64,000 bases of DNA, taken from Obrimoposthia wandeli. Taxonomy: Eukaryota. Made by a program: the position numbers and the translations under genes. This document shows, piece after piece, positions 38,221 through 50,836 of the stretch; the first letter of the stretch is position 1; the number at the start of each line of letters is the position of its first letter. The stretch spans positions 992,001-1,056,000 of the forward strand of contig CDROCS010000506.1 of NCBI GenBank assembly GCA_977020255.1. The letters are read 5' to 3'. The notes under the pieces were generated by a model. The model was not told the origin of the DNA. It saw only the letters and a list, made by a program, of their open reading frames with translations, and ran no database searches.

Positions 38221-40332
38221 TTAATTCCAGTCTTTAGCTAATTGGGTATTATCCTTTTTAAACAGTTCACGCTGGTATTTATCTTTCGCCTCTTCAAGGT
38301 AAGCCGTAAAGATATCAATAGCCTGTTGATAACATACTAGCCCCGCTTCAAAGTCAGCAGGTAACAATAACACTTTAATTATCATCGCATGACAGTGCTG
38401 CATAGTGCCACGTAACATCTCAACTAAAAATGAGTCCTTCGTATCATATTTACTGTGTAATAAAATGAACTGTTGGTGTAATTGCTGCAGTGCGTCATAA
38501 CGAGTTTCAACTGCCGGTTTTATTAATGCAATCATCTCATCAACAAAATCTGGAAATACACTTTGCTCTAACACGGCACTATATTGCACCGCTAAATCAC
38601 GGGTATCTGAAGAATAATGAGCTAACATACGGTCAACTAACTCGACTTTATCCAATGTCACATCAGGCAATGTAATATCTGTTTGATAGGCAGAGATGGT
38701 ATTGTCAATTTTGATACCGTTACCTAGGTTATAGCAATTTACATCCGGATAGAAAGTTAATAACTCCCCGAGTCCTTTTGCCGACATTTGGAAAATCATC
38801 GTTGTTTCAACTTCTTCAACATGATTACCAGGCGCGACAAAACCAGATAAGGCTTTTTTATCAAACAATAATTTATCATCGCCAGCTTTATCATAATAAA
38901 TACTTTTCTTACTGTGATGCGCTTCGCCGCTAAAACCAAGGTCCACACCAAAAAAATAAATATTTTTAAAGCCCATTTTGGTGAAATAAGAAAGCGCAAG
39001 ATTGGAAACAGTTGGGTTCGAATATGTTAATAGCGCTAAACGATCCTTATCAAAACCAAGCGCTTCGTTCTGAAGAATATACGTGGATGGTTCAACCGCT
39101 TTCAGGCCCATTAACTTACGATCAAACAAATCCGTTACATCGGGGGTAATAGTATTTAATGTTAACAAAGGTATAGATTTTACATATTCATCATCACTAA
39201 TCGTTTTCAATACTGAATAGGTCTGTTTAGTACGTTCCATTTCCAGATGAAAATCAGGCTTGATACCATATTGGTGTAATGCGCGCAGTGTCGTACCGCA
39301 ACTCGCCAACAAGACTTTGTCACGATTCGCAATGATGTAATCAATATGCTCATCCAGTGATGGGCCATTACCTAATATAAAGACAGGTAGCGTCTCGCAT
39401 TCAGGTAAAGGGTCGGTTACAGCAAGTAAAGGGACGTGTTGATTTAGGGTGTGGTACTGATGTGCTAACGCCAATAATGAATCATCAAAAAATCCAAGAC
39501 CAAATGCGATATGATAATTTTGGGCATTGAATTTTTCTAGCGCCTTATTGACTTGCTCACTTTGATAATGTTGATAGCAAAAGTTAAAAGTCGCATCATA
39601 GCGCCCTTTTACCATTATCTCATTAGAGATATCAGTAAAGAATTCATCTTCATCCGCACCGAGGCAGAAATGAATGCTGCCGCCATTCTCATCGAGCTGT
39701 TTTAAAATACCAGCCCAATCGAGCGTAAATAAACTCGCATAGAAAAAATCATTTTCAGGCTCATAAATATACAGGCGTTTAACACTATGTTTACCCAGCA
39801 TTTCCGGTAAAAAATAACCTAAACCTAAACCAAAGCAAACCATCATATTGATTGCTTCAGGCAAGATAAACTCTTCTTTATGTTTCTCGTGATAACCACG
39901 CCACAATCTGATTAATTGATTTAAGTATTTAACGTGGATGAAGTCAGCGACTGAATCTGCTTCTTTATTAAAATCAAGACGAGCCATCTTAGGATTAATA
40001 CGATATTGTTCAAAATCAATCAAACTATCACGATAATATTCTTCACCCAGCACAAAGTTATTATCGATATCAACCAGGTGTAATAACTCATCAACTTGTG
40101 CTAATTCGAATTTAGCCGGTCGGTAAGTCGAAAACACGTTATAAATATCAGGGATATAATCCTGAAACGCCTGCATATTGGCTTCATATATGGCGATAGG
40201 ATCTACTTTAGGTTGAGTACTAGCATGAATCGCATCGATTTCATATGCTAAACTAACCTGTTTTTTTCGCTGGGTTTGTTGTGATTCTAAAGCAGCAATC
40301 TGGGCTGCGATATCGACGTTTAATTGACTCAT
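38221..40332 (-). CDS. maf: motility-associated factor (Maf; DUF115/MptE-like) putative flagellin glycosyltransferase
   Basis: ILGNGPSLD, SCGTTL, KPDFHLEMER, PTVSNLA and IYFFGVDLGF motifs; lies directly after fliS-fliT. Confidence 0.85.
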   Translation of the reverse strand: MSQLNVDIAAQIAALESQQTQRKKQVSLAYEIDAIHASTQPKVDPIAIYEANMQAFQDYIPDIYNVFSTYRPAKFELAQVDELLHLVDIDNNFVLGEEYYRDSLIDFEQYRINPKMARLDFNKEADSVADFIHVKYLNQLIRLWRGYHEKHKEEFILPEAINMMVCFGLGLGYFLPEMLGKHSVKRLYIYEPENDFFYASLFTLDWAGILKQLDENGGSIHFCLGADEDEFFTDISNEIMVKGRYDATFNFCYQHYQSEQVNKALEKFNAQNYHIAFGLGFFDDSLLALAHQYHTLNQHVPLLAVTDPLPECETLPVFILGNGPSLDEHIDYIIANRDKVLLASCGTTLRALHQYGIKPDFHLEMERTKQTYSVLKTISDDEYVKSIPLLTLNTITPDVTDLFDRKLMGLKAVEPSTYILQNEALGFDKDRLALLTYSNPTVSNLALSYFTKMGFKNIYFFGVDLGFSGEAHHSKKSIYYDKAGDDKLLFDKKALSGFVAPGNHVEEVETTMIFQMSAKGLGELLTFYPDVNCYNLGNGIKIDNTISAYQTDITLPDVTLDKVELVDRMLAHYSSDTRDLAVQYSAVLEQSVFPDFVDEMIALIKPAVETRYDALQQLHQQFILLHSKYDTKDSFLVEMLRGTMQHCHAMIIKVLLLPADFEAGLVCYQQAIDIFTAYLEEAKDKYQRELFKKDNTQLAKDWN

Positions 40333-40341
40333 AATAACAAC

Positions 40342-40659
40342 CTAAAATTGTTTAATAGCAAGATACCGATTAATCGATTTAGATCTACGTTTAGTGGTAA
40401 CTTGTTGGGATTCGATGTCTGATTTAAATGCGTTTAATCGCGTGATTTGGGTTTTATCATCAGCCATAACTTGCGATAAAAAAGCGTGTGTTCGAGGGCA
40501 TTGAGCAGGGTTAGCTAACGCAACCAACTGCTCAATTAAATGCTGACGTTGAAACAACAGTTCATCACATAGTGCCAACTGTTCAGAACTAATAGCAGCT
40601 ATTGCGTCTACAGATAGCGCTTTAATATTAGCCATCAATTCAACGTCACTACAATCCAT
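40342..40659 (-). CDS. FliT-like flagellar chaperone
   Basis: 105-aa helical protein after fliS with LLFQRQHLIEQL and C-terminal NRY; the call rests mostly on position. Confidence 0.65.
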   Translation of the reverse strand: MDCSDVELMANIKALSVDAIAAISSEQLALCDELLFQRQHLIEQLVALANPAQCPRTHAFLSQVMADDKTQITRLNAFKSDIESQQVTTKRRSKSINRYLAIKQF

Positions 40660-40661
40660 TG

Positions 40662-41084
40662 TTAAGCACCGCGACCTTGATTACGGATCGACTCAGCTTT
40701 TAATTTTTCTGCTTGAGGAATGTTTAGCCACGCATCTTTAATCGGAGTTACGAGTGTCGTAATTTCATCTAATGGTTCTATCGATTGCTCTAATGACGCA
40801 TCATTTAAACGTAGTTGTATGTAACGATATAGCGCATCAAAGTTTTCCCCGATCTCCGGGTGAATTTTGTGGTTGATGCCATCAATTAATCCTGATGTGA
40901 TATTAATTGATTTATTAATCGCTTTTGCTCGACCTTCAATATCTTTGCGTAAAACACAACCCTTTGCGATAGCAACAGAGTCTAACAATCCTTGTAACAA
41001 CATAAAAATAACCTGGTGGTTATCAGCCGTTGAAATACCACTTTCACGACTTACTTGCTGATAACGTCTTATATTAGCTCTCAT
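40662..41084 (-). CDS. fliS: flagellin export chaperone FliS
   Basis: YQQV, HQVIFMLLQG, NFDALYRY and IKDAW. Confidence 0.92.
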   Translation of the reverse strand: MRANIRRYQQVSRESGISTADNHQVIFMLLQGLLDSVAIAKGCVLRKDIEGRAKAINKSINITSGLIDGINHKIHPEIGENFDALYRYIQLRLNDASLEQSIEPLDEITTLVTPIKDAWLNIPQAEKLKAESIRNQGRGA

Positions 41085-41132
41085 GCTTTTTACCTAACTA
41101 TTAATGTATATAAATATTAAAAAACAATATCA

Positions 41133-42527
41133 CTAGCCTAATACATTACGAATATAATCACCGGTGGCGTTGTATCGTGTAACCGTATTATCTAAGGCTG
41201 TGTATTTTTTTCGTAATGTATTCTCAAATGATGAAATATGTTCATCTAATTTAATGCGATCATCTTCAATATCGCGCAAGTTACTGTTCAGCATGTCCTG
41301 CTGCACGGAAATCATACCTCGATTTCCTAAACTATCAGACAATACCTTATTTACTTGAGCGGCAATGCCATTATCCCCTGCAAAAAGTTTGCCAAGATCG
41401 TCTAATGAATTACTTACTGCATCATTTAAGCGCTGGGTACCCGATTGACTACCATTTTTCCCAAACGGACTGATGGACAACATGCCCCCTTCTTCCAAGG
41501 ATATACCTGCAGAATATAACGTGTTTAGCTGCTTATTAGCGCCTTCAACCACACCACCAGTAATCGTCTGCAGTTGCTGCTTCACGCTACGAGCTGTTGG
41601 GTCTAACTTAAGTACACCCGTTTCAGGATTAGTTAAAACATTGATCGTATCCATCAAACTATTATAACCGTCAACAAACCCATACACTAAATCCTCAACA
41701 GCGGCATGATCGGTCGCTGTTGAAAAATTAGCTGGTTCGTTAAGGTTCGTCAAACTATTGGCAGTTATAGTGATACCTGATACTGCATGATTAAAGATAT
41801 TACTATCTTTAGTTATCATATTGCCATCAACGGTAATAATTGCATCAGAGGCTGACTGCCCCACCATACTAGAAGATATGCGAGCAAGGCTTGAATCGGA
41901 AGTAAAGACGGTTAAATCATTTTCTTTACCCATCTTATCTGAGGTATAGATAATTTTAGCACCGACATCAGAGCTAATCACGTTAGCACTAATACCATAG
42001 TTATCAGGTGCATCATTAATTTTCATCTGAATGTCTTGCAAAGTATCGGTGACATTGACATCCACTTGGAAAGTATTCTTACCCGCATCAAAATACAGCA
42101 TACCTTGACCCGGTTTTGAATCACGATCAGGTAAAAAATCAGATTCTAAACGAGCACCTTGAGCAAGTTGTTTAACTTCAACATCAAATGCGCCTTTAGG
42201 CACTACGCCTTTTGTTTGAATAGTAATAGGTAAATTAGCACTATCACTACCAGCATCGGCTGACGTTTGTTCGACATTACGGCCCTGATAGCGAATATTC
42301 GTTTTACTCTGAAAAAAAGAATCTGTATTACCGACTTGAGCCGATGTCGCCTTAAAATCTGCAAGCGCAGACTTCAAGGTCCCAACACCAGATAGCTCTG
42401 TAGTGACCGCGACTTCTTTTTTATTCAGTCGAGTCTCTTTTGGCATTTTTTCAGCGCTTACAAATGAGGTAATGATAGATTCAAGATCTAAACCAGAGCC
42501 TGAGCCTGCCATCGTTATACCAGCCAT
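41133..42527 (-). CDS. fliD: flagellar filament cap FliD
   Basis: GSGSGLDLESII N-terminus, VKQLAQ, DAIITVDG, and C-terminal LRKKYTALD. Confidence 0.93.
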   Translation of the reverse strand: MAGITMAGSGSGLDLESIITSFVSAEKMPKETRLNKKEVAVTTELSGVGTLKSALADFKATSAQVGNTDSFFQSKTNIRYQGRNVEQTSADAGSDSANLPITIQTKGVVPKGAFDVEVKQLAQGARLESDFLPDRDSKPGQGMLYFDAGKNTFQVDVNVTDTLQDIQMKINDAPDNYGISANVISSDVGAKIIYTSDKMGKENDLTVFTSDSSLARISSSMVGQSASDAIITVDGNMITKDSNIFNHAVSGITITANSLTNLNEPANFSTATDHAAVEDLVYGFVDGYNSLMDTINVLTNPETGVLKLDPTARSVKQQLQTITGGVVEGANKQLNTLYSAGISLEEGGMLSISPFGKNGSQSGTQRLNDAVSNSLDDLGKLFAGDNGIAAQVNKVLSDSLGNRGMISVQQDMLNSNLRDIEDDRIKLDEHISSFENTLRKKYTALDNTVTRYNATGDYIRNVLG

Positions 42528-42553
42528 ACATATCCTTAATTTTCATCTATAGA

Positions 42554-42587
42554 TAATGTAAGAGGCAATTATTTGCCTCTTACATTA
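42554..42587. repeat. perfect 15-bp hairpin between flaG and fliD
   Basis: taatgtaagaggcaa-ttat-ttgcctcttacatta. Confidence 0.85.
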
Positions 42588-42618
42588 AACATTCGACTAT
42601 TTTATCACGCTATTAAAA

Positions 42619-43032
42619 TCAGACCATTTCATCAAATAAAAGTCCTGAACTAGCTGATACATTATCCTGAAATTTTTCAATGTTAGCAGCCATCTTCAAT
42701 ACAGCCTCTGACGGCAGTTCTTTCAGAATTTCACCACTCTCAGGATCCACAATTTTAACAAGCATGCGGCCTGTATCGTCATGGATACTAAAATTTAACT
42801 TCTTATTATTAACATCGAAATGAGCTTGCAGTGTATCCTTTGCTTCAAGCAATTTTTGTTCCAGATCTATATTATCGGCAGGTTTAGGGATAGATAGCTC
42901 TGTTTTTTCAGGTAATGGGCTTTCGCTAGGTGAAATTAAAACGGCAGGATTGGTAATGACGGCTTCTTTTGTCACTACAGGGTCGGGATAAAAATGAGTG
43001 TTCTTATTATCCACATTGTTATCAATGGACAT
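42619..43032 (-). CDS. flaG: flagellar protein FlaG
   Basis: LNFSIHDDTGRMLVKIVDPESGEILKELPSE...GLLFDEMV. Start moved to ATG 43032 (GGGGG SD). Confidence 0.9.
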   Translation of the reverse strand: MSIDNNVDNKNTHFYPDPVVTKEAVITNPAVLISPSESPLPEKTELSIPKPADNIDLEQKLLEAKDTLQAHFDVNNKKLNFSIHDDTGRMLVKIVDPESGEILKELPSEAVLKMAANIEKFQDNVSASSGLLFDEMV

Positions 43033-43049
43033 GGTAACCCCCAAAGACT

Positions 43050-43078
43050 AAAATGCCCCGCAAAGTGCAGGGCAAAAA
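43050..43078 (-). terminator. stem-loop/weak terminator after flagellin 1
   Basis: Minus strand ugccc-u-gca-cuu-ugc-g-gggca followed by U4. Confidence 0.5.
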
Positions 43079-43091
43079 TAAACTTAATCGT

Positions 43092-43910
43092 TTACAGTAG
43101 AGATAATGCTACTTGTGACGATTGATTTGCTTGACTTAACATTGAACTAGCAGCTTGCTGCTGTACTTGTGTTTGTGCCAAAGACGCAGATTCTGCTGCA
43201 AAATCTGTATCCATGATACGAGATTTAGACGCAGATACATTTTCTGATACATTCGTAATGTTACGAATTGTTGATGAGAAACGGTTTTGTTTCGCACCCA
43301 ATTCTGCACGTGTGTCGGTTACAACAGCAAGCACTGAATCTAATTTTGAAATTGCAGCTTGTGCGCCACCAGCAGATGAAAGAGTCACAGTAGCAGTTAA
43401 ACCAAGTGCTACAGCGCCCATGTTTTGTGAAATGGTAAGGTTAATGGTTTGACCAGAATCCGCTCCTACTTGAATATCTGCAGCGTATGTACCATTAAGT
43501 AGCTCTTCACCCGCAAATGTAGTATCCGTTGATACGCGAGTAATTTCTTCTTTTAATTGACCAAACTCTTTATCCAACGCAACACGGTCAGCATCACTGT
43601 TTGAACCATTCGCAGATTGAATTGAAAGCACACGCATACGTTGTAACATATTTGTCGTTTCATCTAACGCGCCTTCAGCTGTTTGAGCAAGCGAAATACC
43701 ATCATTGGCATTTCGTGCGCCTTGGTTTAGACCATTTACTTGTGACTCTAAACGTGAACCGATTTGTAAACCAGCAGCATCATCAGCAGCGCTATTAATA
43801 CGTTTACCTGATGATAAACGTTCGAAAGAAGTTTGTAAGTCGTTCGTCGCATTCGATAAGTTACGTTGTGAATTTAAAGATGCTACATTGGTATTTACAT
43901 AAACAGCCAT
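43092..43910 (-). CDS. fliC: flagellin 1 (272 aa, sigma28-type promoter)
   Basis: Flagellin D0/D1 motifs ([39 protein letters not shown]). Confidence 0.97.
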   Translation of the reverse strand: MAVYVNTNVASLNSQRNLSNATNDLQTSFERLSSGKRINSAADDAAGLQIGSRLESQVNGLNQGARNANDGISLAQTAEGALDETTNMLQRMRVLSIQSANGSNSDADRVALDKEFGQLKEEITRVSTDTTFAGEELLNGTYAADIQVGADSGQTINLTISQNMGAVALGLTATVTLSSAGGAQAAISKLDSVLAVVTDTRAELGAKQNRFSSTIRNITNVSENVSASKSRIMDTDFAAESASLAQTQVQQQAASSMLSQANQSSQVALSLL

Positions 43911-44001
43911 ATTCGTCTCCTAAAAGAAATCCTGTAAAGGACTGCTGTGTATGTAAAATACAGCCCTTATTCATAATCGGTTATTTGTATCGTCATAAAA
44001 G

Positions 44002-44028
44002 TTATCGACACCAAAAATACTTCCTTTA
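44002..44028 (-). promoter_or_regulatory. sigma28 (FliA) promoter of flagellin 1
   Basis: TAAA-15 nt-GTCGATAA on the minus strand (consensus TAAA-N15-GCCGATAA). Confidence 0.8.
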
Positions 44029-44220
44029 GAGTTATTTTGTTTTTTTTCTATTTTTTTTCTTAAAAACAGAAACACTAAAATAAAAATGCTATTTTTCAGT
44101 GACTTATGAATTTAAATTTTATTTAGTCGAATTTTTATATTATTGATAATCATAAAGATATGAAATAACTGAGGCTGAACATTAAAAATTTTAAATATAG
44201 AAGAGCGTTTAGTGCGGTGC

Positions 44221-44246
44221 TATTTTGGCTCTTGCGAGCCAAAATA
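44221..44246 (-). terminator. 11-bp GNRA-capped hairpin after flagellin 2
   Basis: tattttggctc-ttgc-gagccaaaata; the loop reads GCAA on minus. No U tail. Confidence 0.55.
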
Positions 44247-44267
44247 ATAATATTAGTTTTACAGCAA

Positions 44268-45095
44268 TTAGCCTTGCAGTAATGACATAGCCACTTGTGA
44301 TTGCTGATTAGCTTGGCTAAGCATGGTACTTGCTGCTTGTTGTGATACTTGATTCTGCGCCAGTTTTGCTGACTCTGCAGCAAAGTCGGCATCCATAATA
44401 CGTGATTTAGACGCTGACACATTCTCTGAAATATTAGACAAGTTACGAATAGTTGATGAAAAACGATTTTGTTTCGCACCTAAGTCCGCTCGAATATCCG
44501 TTACCGTTGCAATAGCGGAATCAATATCTGTAATAGCGTCCTGTGCTGCAGTTGCAACAAGCAGGTTCGCCATTGTAGAGCCGACACCTAGACCTGCGGC
44601 ATTGGTATTCGTTGTAATTTTTACATTAATAATTTGATTGGCATCGGGGCCGATTTGAAAATCTTGATCAAAGGTCGCGTTAAGTAAGTCCATACCACCG
44701 AATGTCGTATCATCAGCAACACGGTTGAGTTCTTCTTGTAACTGACCAAACTCTTTATCAAGCGCTACACGATCAGCATCGCTGTTTGAACCATTGGCAG
44801 ATTGAATTGAAAGCACACGCATACGTTGTAGCATATTCGTTGTTTCGTCTAATGCCCCTTCCGCTGTTTGCGCAAGAGAAATACCATCATTAGCATTTCG
44901 AGACGCTTGATTCAAACCGTTAACTTGAGATTCTAGACGAGAACCTATTTGAAGACCTGCTGCATCATCAGCCGCTGAGTTAATACGCTTACCAGAAGAT
45001 AGACGCTCAAATGATGTTTGTAACGCATTTGTAGAGTTCGTCAAATTACGTTGTGAATTTAAAGATGCTACATTTGTATTTACATATAAGGCCAC
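44268..45095 (-). CDS. fliC: flagellin 2 (275 aa, GTG start, sigma54-type promoter)
   Basis: Flagellin motifs as above; GAAGGAAG SD before GTG. Confidence 0.97.
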
Positions 45096-45151
45096 GGTAT
45101 CTTCCTTCTTCGCTATTTCAAATTAAATAAATGTTATATACCTAAAGATAT

Positions 45152-45167
45152 AGCAATCACTGTGCCA
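45152..45167 (-). promoter_or_regulatory. sigma54 promoter of flagellin 2
   Basis: TGGCAC-AGTGA-TTGCT, exact -24/-12 consensus. Confidence 0.88.
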
Positions 45168-45508
45168 AATAGATGGACGATAAAAACAAAAGTTTAAAGT
45201 GTTGATTTTTAACAGGTTTAGCCAATTAAAAATAAAATTTCTCACATTAGTTATACTTATAACACTCGCATTTTCCGCCAAAGCCAAAAAATTGCCGCTA
45301 GAGTGCCGGAAATGAGCCAAAAAACAAAGCGTTCAATGATACACAATACGCGAGTAAGTAAATTGGTTAGTGGGAATAATGATGAATAGATTCATTACTC
45401 ATGCAGCAGCACAGACGAGTAAAATAAGCTGCGATAATAGCTAGCGTAAATAAGATGAGGACGTGTGTTAAGTAGTCATCGTGATGGGAAAAATAAAGAA
45501 ATATAGAA

Positions 45509-45616
45509 GAAAAAAATACTTTTACCTATACGCTTAATAAGGGCTGTCGCGATAAGGATATAGGTAAAAGCAATATATTAGGCGGCCCCAAAAGGGGCCA
45601 GAGGGAGCCCGCCCTC
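45509..45616 (-). ncRNA. candidate 3'-UTR-derived small RNA of flagellin 3
   Basis: Three hairpins ending in a 12-14-bp stem plus U7. The loop carries ACAGCCCUUAUU, complementary to the flagellin 1 5' UTR (43960-43971). Confidence 0.5.
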
Positions 45617-46435
45617 TTAGCCTAATAGCGACATAGCAACTTGAGATTGCTGATTCGCTTGACTTAGCATAGTACTTGCAGCTTGTTGAGATACTTGATT
45701 TTGAGCAAGTTGTGCAGATTCAGCAGCAAAGTCAGCATCCATAATACGAGATTTTGACGCTGATACATTTTCAGCAATATTCGTTACGTTACGAATAGTT
45801 GATGAGAAACGGTTTTGTTTAGCACCCAGGTCAGCTCGAATATCAGTTACCTGTGCAATCGCACTGTCTAAATCAGCAATCGCGCCTTGCGCAGTACCCG
45901 AAGAAGCAATACTTGCAGAGTTAATCGATAAACCTGTCGTATTCATTGCTGTCGTAATTTTAACATTAATAACTTGGTTAGCATCAGCACCAACTTGAAA
46001 GTCATTATTAAACGATGCATCAAGCAGCGTCTCACCACCAAATGTAGTGTCTTTTGCAACACGATTAATCTCGTCTTTTAATTGACCAAATTCTTTATCT
46101 AACGCCGTTCGGTCAGCCGCACTATTCGAACCATTCGCTGATTGAATAGAAAGCACACGCATACGTTGTAGCATGTTAGTTGTTTCGTCTAACGCACCTT
46201 CAGCCGTTTGCGCCATTGAGATACCGTCATTAGCATTTCGAGCGCCTTGGTTTAAACCATTTACTTGTGCTTCTAAACGAGAACCAATTTGTAAACCTGC
46301 AGCATCATCTGCAGCTGAGTTGACACGTTTACCCGATGATAAACGTTCAAATGATGTTTGCAGGTCATTTGTTGAATTCGTTAGATTACGCTGCGAGTTT
46401 AAAGACGCAACGTTAGTATTTACATATATAGCCAT
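45617..46435 (-). CDS. fliC: flagellin 3 (272 aa, sigma54-type promoter)
   Basis: Flagellin motifs; first flagellin after flgL, the position of Vibrio flaA. Confidence 0.97.
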
Positions 46436-46541
46436 TCGTTTTCCCTCTGTATATAACGTGATTAAGCAATGACATGATTTTCATGACGTCGTGCTTAACG
46501 GTTAGTCTATAAATTATTATATGTTCATTGATTAAATAAAT

Positions 46542-46557
46542 TGCAAATTGTGTGCCA
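46542..46557 (-). promoter_or_regulatory. sigma54 promoter of flagellin 3
   Basis: TGGCAC-ACAAT-TTGCA, immediately after the flgL stop. Confidence 0.88.
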
Positions 46558-46559
46558 AA

Positions 46560-47798
46560 TTAAGCAATTGAATTAAATAAGCTTAAGTTATTGATTTTAT
46601 TAAATGACTTGTAGCTCATTTCTAAAACATTCTGTTCTTTAGTCAGGTCCGTCATTGCCGCGGCAAGATCTGCCTCGGTAAGAATTGCCATCGCTTCTTG
46701 GTTAATGACCTTAAATGATTCGTTTGATTCAGTAACACGTTCAATCGTGTTGTTACGACCACCAATCGTTGACATCGTTGACATCACCGAGTATTTCGCA
46801 TTCTCTATACCAACTTGAGCATCAGCCATTCGTTCCCGAAAGCCCTCTTTCGAAAGTGAAGTATCAAGTAATGATTCTTTTAAGGTTTCAAGCGTGTTCA
46901 AAATATTGACATTGTTAGGTGGTGCTAGCGAAATATCGACACTACCAACAGCACTGCCTGTTGCCATAATCTTGACACCATTAAATTGGATGCCTTGATC
47001 TGAACTGAAATTACCGCTTTGTAATACCGCATTACTACTATCAAGCAGTTCAAACGTATCGCTATTGCCCGGTATCACTGGCGCGATAACGTTAAGTTTA
47101 AAGGTATTATTCGCAGGGTTATTATGATCATAATTACTGGCATGGAAATTATCGAACTGCCCCTGATTAACAACTTCTGTTTCCGCAGCAATGACATTAC
47201 CGCTCAAATTAGTCGTATTCATCATTAATCGTGCGGGGGCTGATTCAAAAACACGTTTACCGTTATCACCGCCATTAACATAAACGTTGGTGGCAATTTG
47301 AATGTCATTATCTTGTTCATTACCACGGTAGGTATATTGGCCAGTTTGCTCATCTTTAGCATACGCTTGTAAATGTGAAGCTGTGCCGGAAAAAATGAAA
47401 TCACCATTCGCACTTTTCGTATTGATTAAGCTGAACACTTCTTTTTGTACTTGGCCAATTTCTAATGAAATAGCGAATCTATCTTGCTTATCGACCGTAC
47501 CATTGAGCGCTCGAACAGAGAGCACACGGCCACGTTCCATTGCTGTATGCAAGTTGCTAAGGGTTGTTTCTTCTAAGCCCAATGTACCTTTGAGCATTAA
47601 ACCATTAGTTTGATATTGGGTATTTTTTTTAATTTCATCATTCAAATAATTCGATTTAGCCACCTCAGCAGGGGCGTCACCCGAGGTTCTGAACTTCTCT
47701 TGTGATGTCACTTGTGAATGCGCTACATTTAAACGTTTTTGCGTTTGTGACATATCTTGCATCGAGCGTGAAAATATTTGATTGTTAGTAATTCTCAT
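46560..47798 (-). CDS. flgL: hook-filament junction protein FlgL
   Basis: MRITNNQIF N-terminus, GDFIFSG, and C-terminal LSLFNSI. Confidence 0.95.
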   Translation of the reverse strand: MRITNNQIFSRSMQDMSQTQKRLNVAHSQVTSQEKFRTSGDAPAEVAKSNYLNDEIKKNTQYQTNGLMLKGTLGLEETTLSNLHTAMERGRVLSVRALNGTVDKQDRFAISLEIGQVQKEVFSLINTKSANGDFIFSGTASHLQAYAKDEQTGQYTYRGNEQDNDIQIATNVYVNGGDNGKRVFESAPARLMMNTTNLSGNVIAAETEVVNQGQFDNFHASNYDHNNPANNTFKLNVIAPVIPGNSDTFELLDSSNAVLQSGNFSSDQGIQFNGVKIMATGSAVGSVDISLAPPNNVNILNTLETLKESLLDTSLSKEGFRERMADAQVGIENAKYSVMSTMSTIGGRNNTIERVTESNESFKVINQEAMAILTEADLAAAMTDLTKEQNVLEMSYKSFNKINNLSLFNSIA

Positions 47799-47803
47799 AC
47801 TGA

Positions 47804-49783
47804 TTACCTCGCCGCGTTCAGAATAGTGTCAAATATTTCTTTTGAAATATTCACGACTTGTGCTGAAGCATTGTAAGCTTGCTCATAGCGCACCATGTTT
47901 GCCGCTTCTTCGTCTAAGTTGACACCTGAAACACTTTCAATCCAATTTTGACTCTGTGTTAATTTGGCTTCATTAGCAGATGAATCAACCCGAGCCGCAC
48001 GAGTTTGGTTACCGACGGTAGAGATTAAGGTTGAAATACCTTCCGCAAAGGTCATCTGATTCTCGCCGTTATTATGATGATTTTTTCGCAACTTATCGTC
48101 ATTTTCCAAACCAGCAAGCTTTAAACCGTTACTGTTATCTGCTATTGAATCGCGGTTATAAGCCAAGGTAAAACTTTCACCTGGGTTTGGTTTCCCATCC
48201 ATTTTAATTTCATAACCAACACCAGGGTTTAATGGTGGAATGGCATTGCTGAATAAATCCTGACCATTTAACGCACCTGAACTCGTTGCCATGTACGTAC
48301 CATTACCATCGAAAATATCAAAGTCACCGCTATTGTTTACAGTGACTTGTTGCGGCGCCGTTATGCTTAAATTATTATTCGAAAAAGATAAACTAGCGTC
48401 CGATATTTCCGTTACCGCGAGTCGACTCATCGTCGTATTCGTTGCGCTAGTCTTAGTTTGTAAGATGGATGCTAAGGCAATATCTTCTGGTTGTGTATTG
48501 GTAATGTCATAGTCATTAAGATTAAACAAGGTCGGACTCATCAAAAATTTATCACCACTTTGGAAACCACCGGCAGCGGCAGAAAAGTCAATTTCAAAAC
48601 CATGTTCTGCTATTTCGACGGGACCAGGGTAAGCACCATTGACGGTGAGTGGATTAGTACTACGTTCACCGTTTTTAATTTCAAAAACATCGAAGGTGAC
48701 CGCGCTAGTCATCGAAATCTGATATTGACTGGTCGTTAACGAACTACCCTCACCCGCAATCATCTGAGAATTAATTACATGCGCAGGGTTAGAGTTAGCT
48801 GAAAAATGCTTAGCTTGCGTTGGGGGAATGGTATATATGTCTTTTCCCATATTACCGTTTAAGTCCAAACCCATTTTATTTTGGCTATTGACTGCATCTG
48901 CAATACCAAGGCTCAACTGGCCAATTTCTCGCAATGATGAATAAACAGTGTGATCGCGAAACTCAAGTAAAGCGCCAATCCGGCCACCAAGATTAACGTC
49001 TTGCAAAGGCATGGTATTTTTATCAATATTTAATACCAGTTCTATGTTGCTAGATTCAGGATCACCCGTTACAGCAGAGAATTGACTCACGTTGTTTTGC
49101 ATAACCAAAGGTTGGCCATTCAGTAAGTTAATTGAGATACTTTTGTTGTCATTGACTATCGTTGATATATCCAGCTCTTTCGCTAATGATTCTATCGCCA
49201 CATCTCGCTGATCAAGTAATGCGCCCGAGGCGCCACGAGATGTGCCGTCTGCAATCATCACCTGCTTATTCAAACCATGTACGTCTTGAATTAATGAATT
49301 CAGTAATGCGGGTTTTTCGGCTATCTCACTGTTGGCTGTTTGCGCTTGGTTATTTAATTGTTCGCCGACATTACGAAAACTTGCCGCCAACGTTTTTGCA
49401 TCGGAGACCGCTAATTGACGGTTTGAAATCGATGTAGGATCATCATTGGCGGTATGAAAAGATTCAAATAACTGTGATATACCAGCAGCCATGTTATTTG
49501 ATTTATCAGATAACACTTGGTCGGTACGGGTGATTTCTGCCAAAAACTTCTCTTTGTTACCAAAGGCGCTGGTATCAATTAATAATTCAGCTTGGGCAAA
49601 TTTGTCGACTTCTCGGCCAGTGAAAGAACGAGCAAGGCCCATATTATCGGTTTGCGAATTATGCTGAGTACGCTGACGGCTATACCCATCGGTATTAACA
49701 TTCGAGATGTTATTACCTGTGGTCTGAAGCATTTGCTGGTGACCTAAAACACCAGAAGTACCTATTTGTAATAAATTCGCCAT
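47804..49783 (-). CDS. flgK: hook-associated protein FlgK
   Basis: TTGNNISNVNTDGYSRQ and SGVNLDEEAANM..YEQAYNASA. Confidence 0.96.
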   Translation of the reverse strand: MANLLQIGTSGVLGHQQMLQTTGNNISNVNTDGYSRQRTQHNSQTDNMGLARSFTGREVDKFAQAELLIDTSAFGNKEKFLAEITRTDQVLSDKSNNMAAGISQLFESFHTANDDPTSISNRQLAVSDAKTLAASFRNVGEQLNNQAQTANSEIAEKPALLNSLIQDVHGLNKQVMIADGTSRGASGALLDQRDVAIESLAKELDISTIVNDNKSISINLLNGQPLVMQNNVSQFSAVTGDPESSNIELVLNIDKNTMPLQDVNLGGRIGALLEFRDHTVYSSLREIGQLSLGIADAVNSQNKMGLDLNGNMGKDIYTIPPTQAKHFSANSNPAHVINSQMIAGEGSSLTTSQYQISMTSAVTFDVFEIKNGERSTNPLTVNGAYPGPVEIAEHGFEIDFSAAAGGFQSGDKFLMSPTLFNLNDYDITNTQPEDIALASILQTKTSATNTTMSRLAVTEISDASLSFSNNNLSITAPQQVTVNNSGDFDIFDGNGTYMATSSGALNGQDLFSNAIPPLNPGVGYEIKMDGKPNPGESFTLAYNRDSIADNSNGLKLAGLENDDKLRKNHHNNGENQMTFAEGISTLISTVGNQTRAARVDSSANEAKLTQSQNWIESVSGVNLDEEAANMVRYEQAYNASAQVVNISKEIFDTILNAAR

Positions 49784-49858
49784 CAGATTACAGCCCTAAC
49801 TATCAGTTCATCACTCAAAAATAAGATTATCTTTATGCTACCAAGACACTAACCAGCG

Positions 49859-50836
49859 TTATTTAAATGCATCATGCTTCATCACATTCTGTATTTTCGC
49901 TGCGTAATTAGGATCCGTGGCATAACCCGCTTGCTGTAAACCATTCAAGAACTGTGCCGAATCTGCAGAATTACTCAATGCATCACTATAACGGTCACCC
50001 GATTGCAAGAAATTAGCAAAATCATTAAAGCTCGATTGAAAGTCTTGATAACTTCTAAATTGATGATTTTCACGTTTCGCCACACCGTCTTTAAACTCTA
50101 ACGTATCAACACTTGCCGTTGGACCTTCCCAACGCTTATCAGCTTTAATATTGAATAAATTATGTGAGCTATCACCTTGATTATCTGTAGATACTTTCTT
50201 ACCCCAGCCTGTTTCTAGTGCAGCTTGAGCAAGTAACACATCAGGAGATACATTCAAACGTTTCGCAACCACATCAGCAAAAGGGGCGAGTGAAGCGACA
50301 AACTCTTCAGGGCTATTGAACTGCATCTTTGGCGCTGCAGCTAAAGGGACTCCCGTCGAATCAGCTACGGGGTTACCGTCAGCATCAACAACAGGGATTG
50401 CTGGACTTTCGCTATCTTCCGGTAACGCTTTCTTTGCAGTCGCGTCAGCGTTGTTCGATCTCAAGTTCTGCAATGGGTTGCTATCACCATTTAATGACGA
50501 AGCTGGCATATAATTGCCGCCATCATTGGATAATTGCTTAACAATGACATCTGCTAACCCAAGGCTACCGGTTTGGCTCATGTCGGCTGCCATCTGCTTA
50601 TCTTGCATGTCACGATAAAACTGGGTGTAGTTATTATTCATTGGGCTGTCGGTTTCAAATGCAGCATTGGCTTCACGCATACTTTTCATCAACATGTTGG
50701 TAAACAAGGATTCAAATTGTTGCGCGACTTCTTTCAATGCGCCTTCATCGTTACCTTGCGCACGCTTACGCAAAGAATCCAGATTATGCGTATCTAAGAC
50801 GTTACTGTTCACATTTGTTTTAAATGAATTATCCAT
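49859..50836 (-). CDS. flgJ: flagellar rod assembly protein / muramidase FlgJ
   Basis: AQQFESLF rod-binding domain plus LAQAALETGWG, NLFNIKA and GYATDPNYA. Confidence 0.96.
   Translation of the reverse strand: MDNSFKTNVNSNVLDTHNLDSLRKRAQGNDEGALKEVAQQFESLFTNMLMKSMREANAAFETDSPMNNNYTQFYRDMQDKQMAADMSQTGSLGLADVIVKQLSNDGGNYMPASSLNGDSNPLQNLRSNNADATAKKALPEDSESPAIPVVDADGNPVADSTGVPLAAAPKMQFNSPEEFVASLAPFADVVAKRLNVSPDVLLAQAALETGWGKKVSTDNQGDSSHNLFNIKADKRWEGPTASVDTLEFKDGVAKRENHQFRSYQDFQSSFNDFANFLQSGDRYSDALSNSADSAQFLNGLQQAGYATDPNYAAKIQNVMKHDAFK

What the first reader, a model, noticed from the sequence alone, without database searches (positions are those of the whole stretch)
45509..45616. Candidate flagellin 3'-UTR-derived sRNA with a 12-nt seed complementary to another flagellin's 5' UTR
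Seen: after the stop of the sigma54-driven flagellin 3, the minus-strand RNA folds into two GC-rich hairpins (45600-45617, 45584-45599). A third hairpin has a 12-14-bp stem (cuuuuaccuaua/uauagguaaaag) followed by U7, i.e. a terminator. Its loop region holds ACAGCCCUUAUU (45547-45536), the exact complement of AAUAAGGGCUGU in the 5' UTR of the sigma28 flagellin 1 (43971-43960, -61 to -50 from AUG). My rough estimate for a chance 12-mer between these two ~100-nt UTRs is about 4e-4 assuming uniform base composition; it is far less significant if all flagellar intergenic DNA is searched. Established: 3'-UTR sRNAs with C-rich loop seeds are a known class. From memory (please verify), V. cholerae has a ProQ-bound sRNA, FlaX, downstream of sigma54 flaA that regulates other flagellins. 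Inference: an RNA link from class III flagellin transcription to class IV flagellin translation, probably undescribed in this lineage.
Basis: partly seen in the sequence, partly recalled or inferred. Interest (0 to 1): 0.85.

Follow-up and report, generated by a model that had tools for sequence, protein, structure and literature searches.

The report
Conserved flagellin mRNA tail, variable loop
The stretch after this Moritella flagellin gene is a strongly conserved folded RNA tail, but the 12-letter match to another flagellin's leader lies in its one freely evolving loop, so the proposed regulatory link is at best recent and specific to this lineage.

Summary

The organism is a Moritella. In 16 distinct versions from the genus, the 3' UTR is a four-helix module. 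P1 pairs the last codons with the 'linker', P2 and P3 are GC hairpins, and P4 is a long hairpin.

The 85-nt core is 98-100% identical in species whose fla3 four-fold sites are only 55-73% identical. Downstream DNA is scrambled. So this is a functional RNA, and it has no Rfam match.

The 'seed' lies in the P4 apical loop, the only part that drifts. It is replaced in a relative with 90% FlgL identity and absent from the deep clade, whose loops are short.

The target is one arm of a stem-loop that is invariant across the genus. That stem-loop also occurs in Motilimonas, which has no P4.

Loop-to-target pairing beats shuffles only in this genome (p about 0.003). A flgK ribosome-site change specific to this genome also fits the seed.

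No data on RNA ends were available. My verdict is a conserved 3'-end stability or chaperone module. A FlaX-like link is possible here (about 0.2) but is not conserved.

The parts
45617..46435 (-). fla3, a 272-aa flagellin directly after flgL. It has a sigma54-type promoter, TGGCAC-N5-TTGCA, at 46557-46542.
   Evidence: ORF list, sequence, same gene order with Pfam Flagellin_N/C in relatives.
45620..45627 (-). P1 5' strand. The last sense codons (UAUUAGGC, Leu-Leu-Gly) pair with the 'linker'.
   Evidence: P1 appears in the MFE of 14 of 16 species versions and in the RNAalifold consensus. The last two codons, UUA GGC, are invariant in all 16 although synonymous sites elsewhere are 40-73% identical.
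45600..45617 (-). P2 hairpin, GAGGG / CCCUC, starting at the last base of the stop codon.
   Evidence: The stem is kept in all 16 while the loop differs between clades.
45584..45599 (-). P3 hairpin, GGCCCC-UUUU-GGGGCC.
   Evidence: The register shifts in the deep clade but the hairpin is kept. Motilimonas has the equivalent hairpin followed by a U-tract, which there serves as the terminator.
45576..45583 (-). P1 3' strand (GCCUAAUA).
45517..45572 (-). P4 long hairpin. It has a 15-bp lower stem that is invariant in 16 sequences, a one-base gap, and 4 bp of CUUA/UAAG.
   Evidence: Three G-U changes and one compensatory change are consistent with pairing. There is no other copy in the 64-kb window (covariance model R1).
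45537..45552 (-). Variable apical loop of P4. It holds the proposed seed, ACAGCCCUUAUU (45547-45536).
   Evidence: It is the only non-conserved part of the element. The loop is 16-21 nt in the near clade and about 8 nt in the deep clade. A strain variant with indels at 45535 and 45546 was seen in run X1.
45510..45516 (-). U7 tract after P4, the likely intrinsic termination point in this genome.
   Evidence: Sequence. In relatives the tract is weak or absent: UAUUUAC, UAUUUCCCCC, and UAGCAG in L013.
43960..43971 (-). Proposed target, AAUAAGGGCUGU, in the fla1 5' UTR at -61..-50.
43937..43968 (-). Conserved fla1 5' UTR stem-loop, AAGGGCUGU / GCAGUCCUU (9 bp), with a variable loop. The target is its 5' arm.
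   Evidence: Fold. The stem is invariant in 10 distinct Moritella leaders, with G-U to A-U and U-G to C-G changes in L013. A similar stem is present in Motilimonas.
44002..44028 (-). Sigma28-type promoter of fla1, TAAAG-N15-CGATAA.
   Evidence: Sequence, conserved in relatives.
49790..49797 (-). flgK ribosome-binding site, AGGGCUGU. It gives 8 bp with the seed and is specific to this genome.
   Evidence: Relatives have UGGAGCAGU or UGGAGUCGU at the same place.

Best explanation
The interval is the structured 3' end of the sigma54-dependent flagellin (fla3) mRNA of a Moritella species. It is a genus-conserved four-helix RNA module.

P1 closes the last three codons against the so-called linker. 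P1 encloses two GC-rich hairpins, P2 and P3. A long, AU-rich, roughly 20-bp hairpin, P4, follows and in this genome ends in U7, where transcription most likely stops.

Shown: the structure, its extreme conservation, and its absence from Rfam.

Inferred: the module acts in cis. It protects the 3' end of this abundant mRNA from 3' exonucleases and/or serves as a docking site for an RNA chaperone of the ProQ/FinO or Hfq type. It may survive as a stable 3' fragment.

The 12-nt complement to the fla1 leader sits in the P4 apical loop, which is not under detectable constraint. It is therefore not the conserved function of the element. It is either chance or a young add-on specific to this lineage.
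For: Conservation:
- The 85-nt core (element without the apical loop) is 98-100% identical to 9 relatives whose fla3 four-fold degenerate sites are 55-73% identical.
- It is 85-89% identical in the deep clade, where four-fold sites are 40-57% identical.
- The 150 nt downstream are at background identity, about 0.55-0.65 (alignments).

Structure:
- MFE z-score is -4.9.
- RNAalifold recovers P1-P4 in 16 sequences.
- P1 forms in the MFE of 14 of 16 versions. The synonymous positions of the last two codons are frozen.
- There is no Rfam family at E up to 10 apart from spurious hits.
- The element occurs once per locus.

The loop is unconstrained:
- There are nine different loops among near relatives.
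- The relative with 93% FlgL identity keeps 10 bp, two of them G-U. The relative with 90% has an unrelated loop. The deep clade has loops of about 8 nt.
- Pairing with the fla1 leader beats loop shuffles only in the window (p=0.003). It is 0.08 and 0.13 in two relatives and 0.27-0.99 in the other eight.

The target is conserved independently of the seed.
Against: - No RNA 3'/5'-end or abundance data exist for this organism.
- Metatranscriptome contigs of the same or a very close strain run 150-300 nt past P4. Termination there is therefore not shown, although DNA carry-over cannot be excluded.
- Simple exonuclease protection does not explain the sequence invariance of the P4 stem, as opposed to mere structural conservation. 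Something sequence-specific is implied, such as a protein, RNase III or another RNA.
- In this genome the same seed fits two flagellar mRNAs (fla1 with 12 bp, the flgK RBS with 8 bp). The flgK site is a derived change specific to this genome, which is what a young trans-acting link would look like.
- The U-tract is poorly conserved, so 'terminator' cannot be the whole conserved function.
Confidence: 0.6

Rival explanations
1. FlaX-like trans-acting 3'-UTR sRNA in this species. The fla3 3' end is released or terminated as a small RNA. Its P4 apical loop invades the fla1 leader stem-loop at -61..-50 and covers the flgK Shine-Dalgarno sequence. This would couple sigma54 flagellin transcription to translation of the sigma28 flagellin and the hook-filament junction protein.
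For: - Exact 12-nt complement, p about 4e-4 pairwise and 1.4e-3 for the loop against 19 flagellar leaders.
- Accessibility-corrected energy is -8.4 to -10.7 kcal/mol, and fla1 ranks first of 57 gene starts in the window, with flgK second.
- The flgK RBS matches the seed only in this genome (p=0.017 against loop shuffles).
- The gene positions match FlaX/flaA/flaB exactly.
- The sister lineage keeps 10 bp through C-to-U changes that preserve G-U pairs.
- Environmental contigs carry the same seed, and one strain variant still keeps 10 of the 12.
Against: - The seed is not conserved. The relative with 90% FlgL identity and the deep clade lack it.
- Loop divergence is about the same as at neutral sites.
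- The target is conserved without the seed and is buried in a 9-bp stem, with an opening cost of 5-7 kcal/mol.
- Cluster-wide, the duplex energy is no better than for shuffled loops (p=0.28).
- There is no evidence of a discrete RNA.
- Seeds inside terminator loops are unusual for enterobacterial-type 3'-UTR sRNAs (my own knowledge).
Confidence: 0.22
2. Constant scaffold with an evolvable seed. P1-P4 is a conserved chaperone-binding scaffold. The apical loop is retargeted in each lineage to a different flagellar mRNA.
For: - In JT01 and sp. 5 the loop has an 11-nt perfect complement to the flgC ribosome site (p=0.017).
- The L014 loop has a 10-mer complement (p=0.023).
- In M. viscosa the loop gives 12 bp, three of them G-U, at the flgD start.
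- In M. dasanensis the loop gives 10 bp, two of them G-U, at the flgK RBS.
- Fisher combination of the longest-match p-values is about 0.007 with the window and about 0.06 without it. I computed this by hand.
Against: - Without the window, which was picked after the fact, the signal is marginal.
- Energy-based statistics show nothing in any species.
- Cognate loop-flgK pairs are no better than non-cognate pairs.
- The deep-clade loops are too short to carry a seed.
Confidence: 0.1
3. An ordinary intrinsic terminator with a chance match. The conservation would then be a by-product, for example of gene conversion among flagellin copies, or of a DNA-level protein site for the downstream sigma54 promoter.
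For: - Stem plus U7 in this genome.
- P4 is a perfect DNA palindrome about 350 bp upstream of the fla2 sigma54 promoter.
- Flagellin genes are paralogous.
Against: - The 3' UTRs of fla2 and fla1 are unrelated to this element, so gene conversion cannot explain it.
- The U-tract is the least conserved feature, whereas ordinary terminators diverge freely in stem sequence.
- The spacing between the palindrome arms varies from 17 to 31 nt, which fits an RNA hairpin and not a dimeric DNA site.
- P1 involves coding sequence.
- The built-in terminator scan did not call it.
Confidence: 0.08

Closest known systems
FlaX of Vibrio cholerae and V. parahaemolyticus (PMC11879080; bioRxiv 10.64898/2026.08.28.747715)
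   Same: - It lies in the 3' UTR of the sigma54-dependent flagellin that follows flgL.
- The candidate partner is the leader of the sigma28 flagellin that precedes flaG-fliD.
- The 3' UTR is conserved within the genus.
   Different: - FlaX is 265 nt (over 300 nt in V. parahaemolyticus), against about 105-125 nt here.
- FlaX uses three binding sites, including the SD, and both partners are conserved across Vibrio. Here there is one site, the seed is not conserved, and the SD is not covered on fla1.
- RNase E processing and ProQ binding are unknown here.
- Sequence homology could not be tested, because no Vibrio locus could be fetched.
FliX of E. coli (3' UTR of fliC, Hfq-bound; PMC10578931)
   Same: It is an RNA derived from the end of a flagellin mRNA that feeds back on flagellar gene expression.
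   Different: - FliX is sigma28-dependent and about 200 and 100 nt long.
- It includes a REP element and pairs inside coding sequences (fliC, the S10 operon).
- It has no similarity in architecture to this element.
ProQ/FinO-type 3'-end ligands and 3' stabilising hairpins (for example the protection of mRNA 3' ends by ProQ cited in PMC11879080)
   Same: - It is a multi-hairpin, highly structured 3' end with a terminal hairpin and a short U tail.
- It sits on a very abundant mRNA.
   Different: - No binding data exist.
- The invariance of the P4 stem sequence goes beyond what is known to be needed for ProQ recognition (my own knowledge).
First-flagellin 3' UTR of Motilimonas (L019:16410-16450)
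   Same: - The gene order is the same.
- A GAGG-type hairpin follows the stop codon directly, and then a GC hairpin.
   Different: - There the second hairpin carries the U-tract and is the terminator.
- P1 and P4 are absent, and covariance model R1 finds no match.

Membership tests
FlaX (Vibrio flagellin 3'-UTR sRNA) | Encoded in the 3' UTR of the sigma54 (class III) flagellin next to flgL | tested here: met
   Gene order flgK-flgL-fla3, with a TGGCAC-N5-TTGCA promoter.
FlaX (Vibrio flagellin 3'-UTR sRNA) | Sequence or structure homology to Vibrio FlaX | not tested
   No Vibrio locus could be fetched. FlgL is at most 27% identical outside Moritella. The top 120 FlgI hits contain no Vibrio. The paper's supplement is not held. 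Rfam gives no match. The lengths differ: about 105 nt here against 265 nt.
FlaX (Vibrio flagellin 3'-UTR sRNA) | Pairs with several sites in the leader of the sigma28 flagellin upstream of flaG, including the ribosome-binding site | tested here: not met
   There is one strong site at -61..-50. Only a 5-bp CCUAA/UUAGG match lies at the SD, and that strand is engaged in P1.
FlaX (Vibrio flagellin 3'-UTR sRNA) | Seed and target sites both conserved across the genus | tested here: not met
   The target is invariant and the seed is variable or absent.
FlaX (Vibrio flagellin 3'-UTR sRNA) | Released by RNase E as a stable RNA and bound by ProQ | not testable with these tools
   Only assembled contigs of metatranscriptomes were available, and they show no ends.
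Rho-independent terminator | Stable stem-loop directly followed by a U-rich tract | tested here: met
   This holds for this genome: a 15-bp stem plus U7. The stem is AU-rich with a 28-nt loop, and the consensus scan did not call it.
Rho-independent terminator | U-tract retained in orthologous elements | tested here: not met
   Relatives have tails such as UAUUUAC, UAUUUCCCCC and UAGCAG.
Base-pairing 3'-UTR-derived sRNA (general) | The conserved single-stranded seed is the best-conserved part of the RNA | tested here: not met
   The proposed seed is the least conserved part. The conserved 'linker' is paired in P1.
Base-pairing 3'-UTR-derived sRNA (general) | Discrete, abundant short transcript | tested here: inconclusive
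   RNA-library contigs cover 45207-45910 and 45361-45827 at lower depth than the coding sequence. There is no end information.
Any Rfam 15 family | Covariance-model match | tested here: not met
   The only hit is a spurious Histone3 stem-loop match on P3 (20.8 bits against a gathering score of 34).

The most novel reading that the evidence does not exclude
The Moritella fla3 tail is a fixed, protein-binding RNA scaffold. Its apical loop is a fast-evolving, exchangeable seed. Each lineage would then wire the sigma54 flagellin transcript to a different flagellar mRNA: fla1 and flgK here, flgC in JT01 and sp. 5. In this genome the flgK ribosome site has co-evolved towards the seed.
Probability: 0.1. 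Interest if true: 0.8.

Novelty: new member of a known kind. Interest (0 to 1): 0.4.

Why it matters
RNAs derived from flagellin 3' UTRs (FlaX, FliX) are a recent addition to flagellar regulation and so far are known in Vibrio and E. coli. A genus-wide, almost frozen 3'-UTR module on the equivalent flagellin gene of a different family (Moritellaceae) shows that selection acts on flagellin mRNA tails more widely.

It also gives a compact, testable RNA of about 105-125 nt for work on stability or chaperone binding.

The negative part matters as well. It shows how a striking 12-nt complement can sit in the one unconstrained loop of an otherwise conserved element. Comparative data, and not the match itself, should therefore decide such calls.

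Tried and rejected
1. Rfam scan of 40000-50000 at E up to 10 gave nothing relevant.

2. RNA evidence. Two run searches and the single read-laying run gave only assembled contigs. They show no transcript ends, and depth is not interpretable as sRNA abundance.

3. Fetching a Vibrio flgL-flaA locus to test homology with FlaX failed.
   - FlgL finds nothing closer than 27% identity outside Moritella.
   - The best 120 FlgI hits are from Aeromonas, Motilimonas and Psychromonas.
   - The supplement of the FlaX paper is not held.

4. The 'linker' as a conserved anti-SD seed. RNAcofold paired CCUAA with the fla1 SD in most species. I rejected this because that strand pairs in cis with the last codons as P1.

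5. An apparent conserved 11-bp linker target upstream of fliS. It arises because fliD ends with codons similar to those at the end of fla3. Rejected as a by-product.

6. Covariation between loop and flgK RBS. One compensatory position looked promising by eye. The matrix of cognate against non-cognate pairs and the shuffles show significance only for the window.

7. A small ORF in the element. Loop lengths differ by amounts that are not multiples of three, so no frame is conserved.

8. A repeated or mobile element. Model R1 finds only the element itself in the window and nothing in four loci outside the genus.

9. RNAcofold cannot represent loop-to-mRNA pairing. I therefore wrote a contiguous-helix plus accessibility score.

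Full report
**What is there**

All genes in this part of the window lie on the minus strand. Their order is flgK (49783-47804), flgL (47798-46560), three flagellin genes, then flaG, fliD and fliS. The flagellins are:
- fla3, 46435-45617;
- fla2, 45095-44268;
- fla1, 43910-43092.

fla3 and fla2 are preceded by TGGCAC-N5-TTGC(A/T). fla1 is preceded by TAAAG-N15-CGATAA. So the sigma54 and sigma28 assignment by motif is right.

The MFE is -44.5 kcal/mol with z = -4.9.

The 12-mer at 45547-45536 is the exact complement of 43971-43960, at -61..-50 of fla1. It gives 1.4e-3 for the loop against 19 flagellar leaders, and 1.5e-2 for the whole 3' UTR against those leaders.

**Organism and relatives**

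FlgL places the window in Moritella. It is 84% identical to Moritella sp. JT01 and M. dasanensis, 82% to M. viscosa, and 93% and 90% to metagenome contigs. A deeper clade is at 64-68%.

I collected the locus from 3 genomes, 6 metagenome contigs found with a 23-nt pattern from the element, and 7 contigs fetched through FlgL homologues. All have the same gene order.

**The 3' UTR is a strongly selected RNA**

In 16 distinct versions, the sequence from the stop codon to the end of the long hairpin is almost invariant. Alignment collapses immediately downstream.
- Near clade: the 85-nt core without the apical loop is 98-100% identical, while four-fold degenerate sites of fla3 are only 55-73% identical.
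- Deep clade: the core is 85-89% identical, against 40-57% at four-fold sites.
- The next 150 nt are at background identity.

When the end of the coding sequence is included, a further helix appears. This helix, P1, encloses both GC hairpins. It appears in the MFE of 14 of 16 versions and in the RNAalifold consensus. The last two codons, UUA GGC, are invariant, including their synonymous positions.

The element is therefore P1-P2-P3 plus the long hairpin P4. P4 has an invariant 15-bp stem and 4 further base pairs. The few changes are G-U or compensatory changes.

It has no Rfam match. It occurs once in the window. Model R1 does not find it in Motilimonas, Psychromonas or two other flagellar loci. 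Motilimonas has the same gene order, with two hairpins after the stop, and the second one is a canonical terminator.

**The seed is the one unconstrained part**

The P4 apical loop differs in nearly every lineage.
- Relative with 93% FlgL identity: keeps 10 bp with the target, two of them G-U.
- Relative with 90%: has an unrelated, longer loop.
- M. dasanensis: has almost no complementarity.
- JT01, sp. 5 and the MAGs: keep 5-6 bp.
- The four deep-clade versions: have loops of about 8 nt with no seed at all.

Tested against composition-matched shuffles of each loop, pairing with the cognate fla1 leader is significant only in the window (p=0.003). It is marginal in two relatives (0.08 and 0.13) and random in the other eight. 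Loop divergence between the window and its sister is about the same as at four-fold sites.

**The target is conserved for its own reasons**

AAGGGCUGU is the 5' arm of a 9-bp stem-loop (with GCAGUCCUU) in the fla1 leader. The stem is invariant in ten distinct Moritella leaders, while its loop varies. In L013 a G-U pair becomes A-U and a U-G pair becomes C-G.

The stem-loop is present in the deep clade, which lacks the seed. A similar stem stands in the sigma28 flagellin leader of Motilimonas, which lacks P4.

**What still speaks for a link in this genome**

I used a contiguous-helix score corrected for accessibility.
- The loop-fla1 interaction scores -8.4 to -10.7 kcal/mol and ranks first among 57 gene starts in the window.
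- flgK is second, with ACAGCCCU pairing to AGGGCUGU across its Shine-Dalgarno region.
- flgJ has a 6-bp match. This confirms the companion note s1-208584.

The flgK site is derived. Relatives carry UGGAGCAGU or UGGAGUCGU there. The cognate duplex beats loop shuffles only in the window (p=0.017).

Against this, when bulges and G-U pairs are allowed across all 19 leaders, shuffled loops do as well (p=0.28).

**Other lineages**

- JT01 and sp. 5 have an 11-nt perfect complement to the flgC ribosome site (p=0.017).
- L014 has a 10-mer complement (p=0.023).
- Other hits are at chance level.

Combined, the idea of an evolvable seed is marginal once the window, which was chosen after the fact, is left out.

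**Expression**

Only assembled contigs of public runs could be laid on the window. Two marine metatranscriptome runs carry the identical seed. Their contigs span 45207-45910 and 45361-45827, so they run past P4, at lower depth than the coding-sequence contig. One run shows a strain variant with indels at 45535 and 45546 that keeps 10 of the 12 positions. This neither shows nor excludes a short RNA.

The U-tract after P4 is good here but weak or missing in most relatives. Termination therefore cannot be the whole conserved role.

**Literature**

Work in V. parahaemolyticus adds FlaY and FlaZ, and activation of other flagellins. FliX of E. coli comes from the fliC 3' UTR (PMC10578931). Nothing was found on Moritella.

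**Conclusion**

The conserved object is a new, structured 3'-end module of a flagellin mRNA. It most likely acts in cis, in stability, 3'-end definition or chaperone docking. The proposed seed-target link is not a conserved feature. It remains a possibility specific to this lineage, at about 0.2.

Noticed in passing
window 43937-43968 (-); L019:16640-16690: The fla1 5' UTR carries a 9-bp stem-loop (AAGGGCUGU/GCAGUCCUU). It is invariant across Moritella and recognisable in Motilimonas. Two GGA motifs follow it (ACAGGAU and UAGGAGA). Its function is unknown. It may be a protein (CsrA-type) or ribosome-standby element.
   Followed up: partly
window 49790-49797 (-): The flgK ribosome-binding site reads UAGGGCUGU only in this genome. 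All relatives have UGGAG(CA/UC)GU. The new version shares the 9-mer AGGGCUGUA with the fla1 leader.
   Followed up: partly
window 45281-45309 (-): A conserved block (CCGGCA..CTAGCGGCAATTTTTTGGCTT) sits in the otherwise scrambled fla3-fla2 spacer, about 120-150 bp upstream of the fla2 sigma54 promoter. It is a candidate activator (enhancer) site.
   Followed up: no
window 44229-44250 (-): The fla2 3' UTR has its own conserved hairpin (UUUUGGCUC-GCAA-GAGCCAAAA), with the U-run on the 5' side and no U tail. It is unrelated to the fla3 element.
   Followed up: no
window 45601-45608 (-) and about 46442-46449 (-): The 3' arm of P2 (UCCCUCUG) is an 8-nt complement of fla3's own Shine-Dalgarno region (CAGAGGGA), and this holds in every species examined. 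It could allow end-to-end pairing of the mRNA, or it may be incidental to a GAGGG/CCCUC hairpin.
   Followed up: no
L015:234-2210: In this metagenome contig flgK is split into two ORFs (192 and 431 aa). This is either a frameshift or an assembly error.
   Followed up: no
window, downstream of fliS; for example L010:17534-19645: A 703-aa Maf-type gene (Maf_flag10_N plus MptE-like, a flagellin-modification family) follows fliS in all Moritella loci and in Motilimonas. It goes with the short flagellins of about 272 aa.
   Followed up: no
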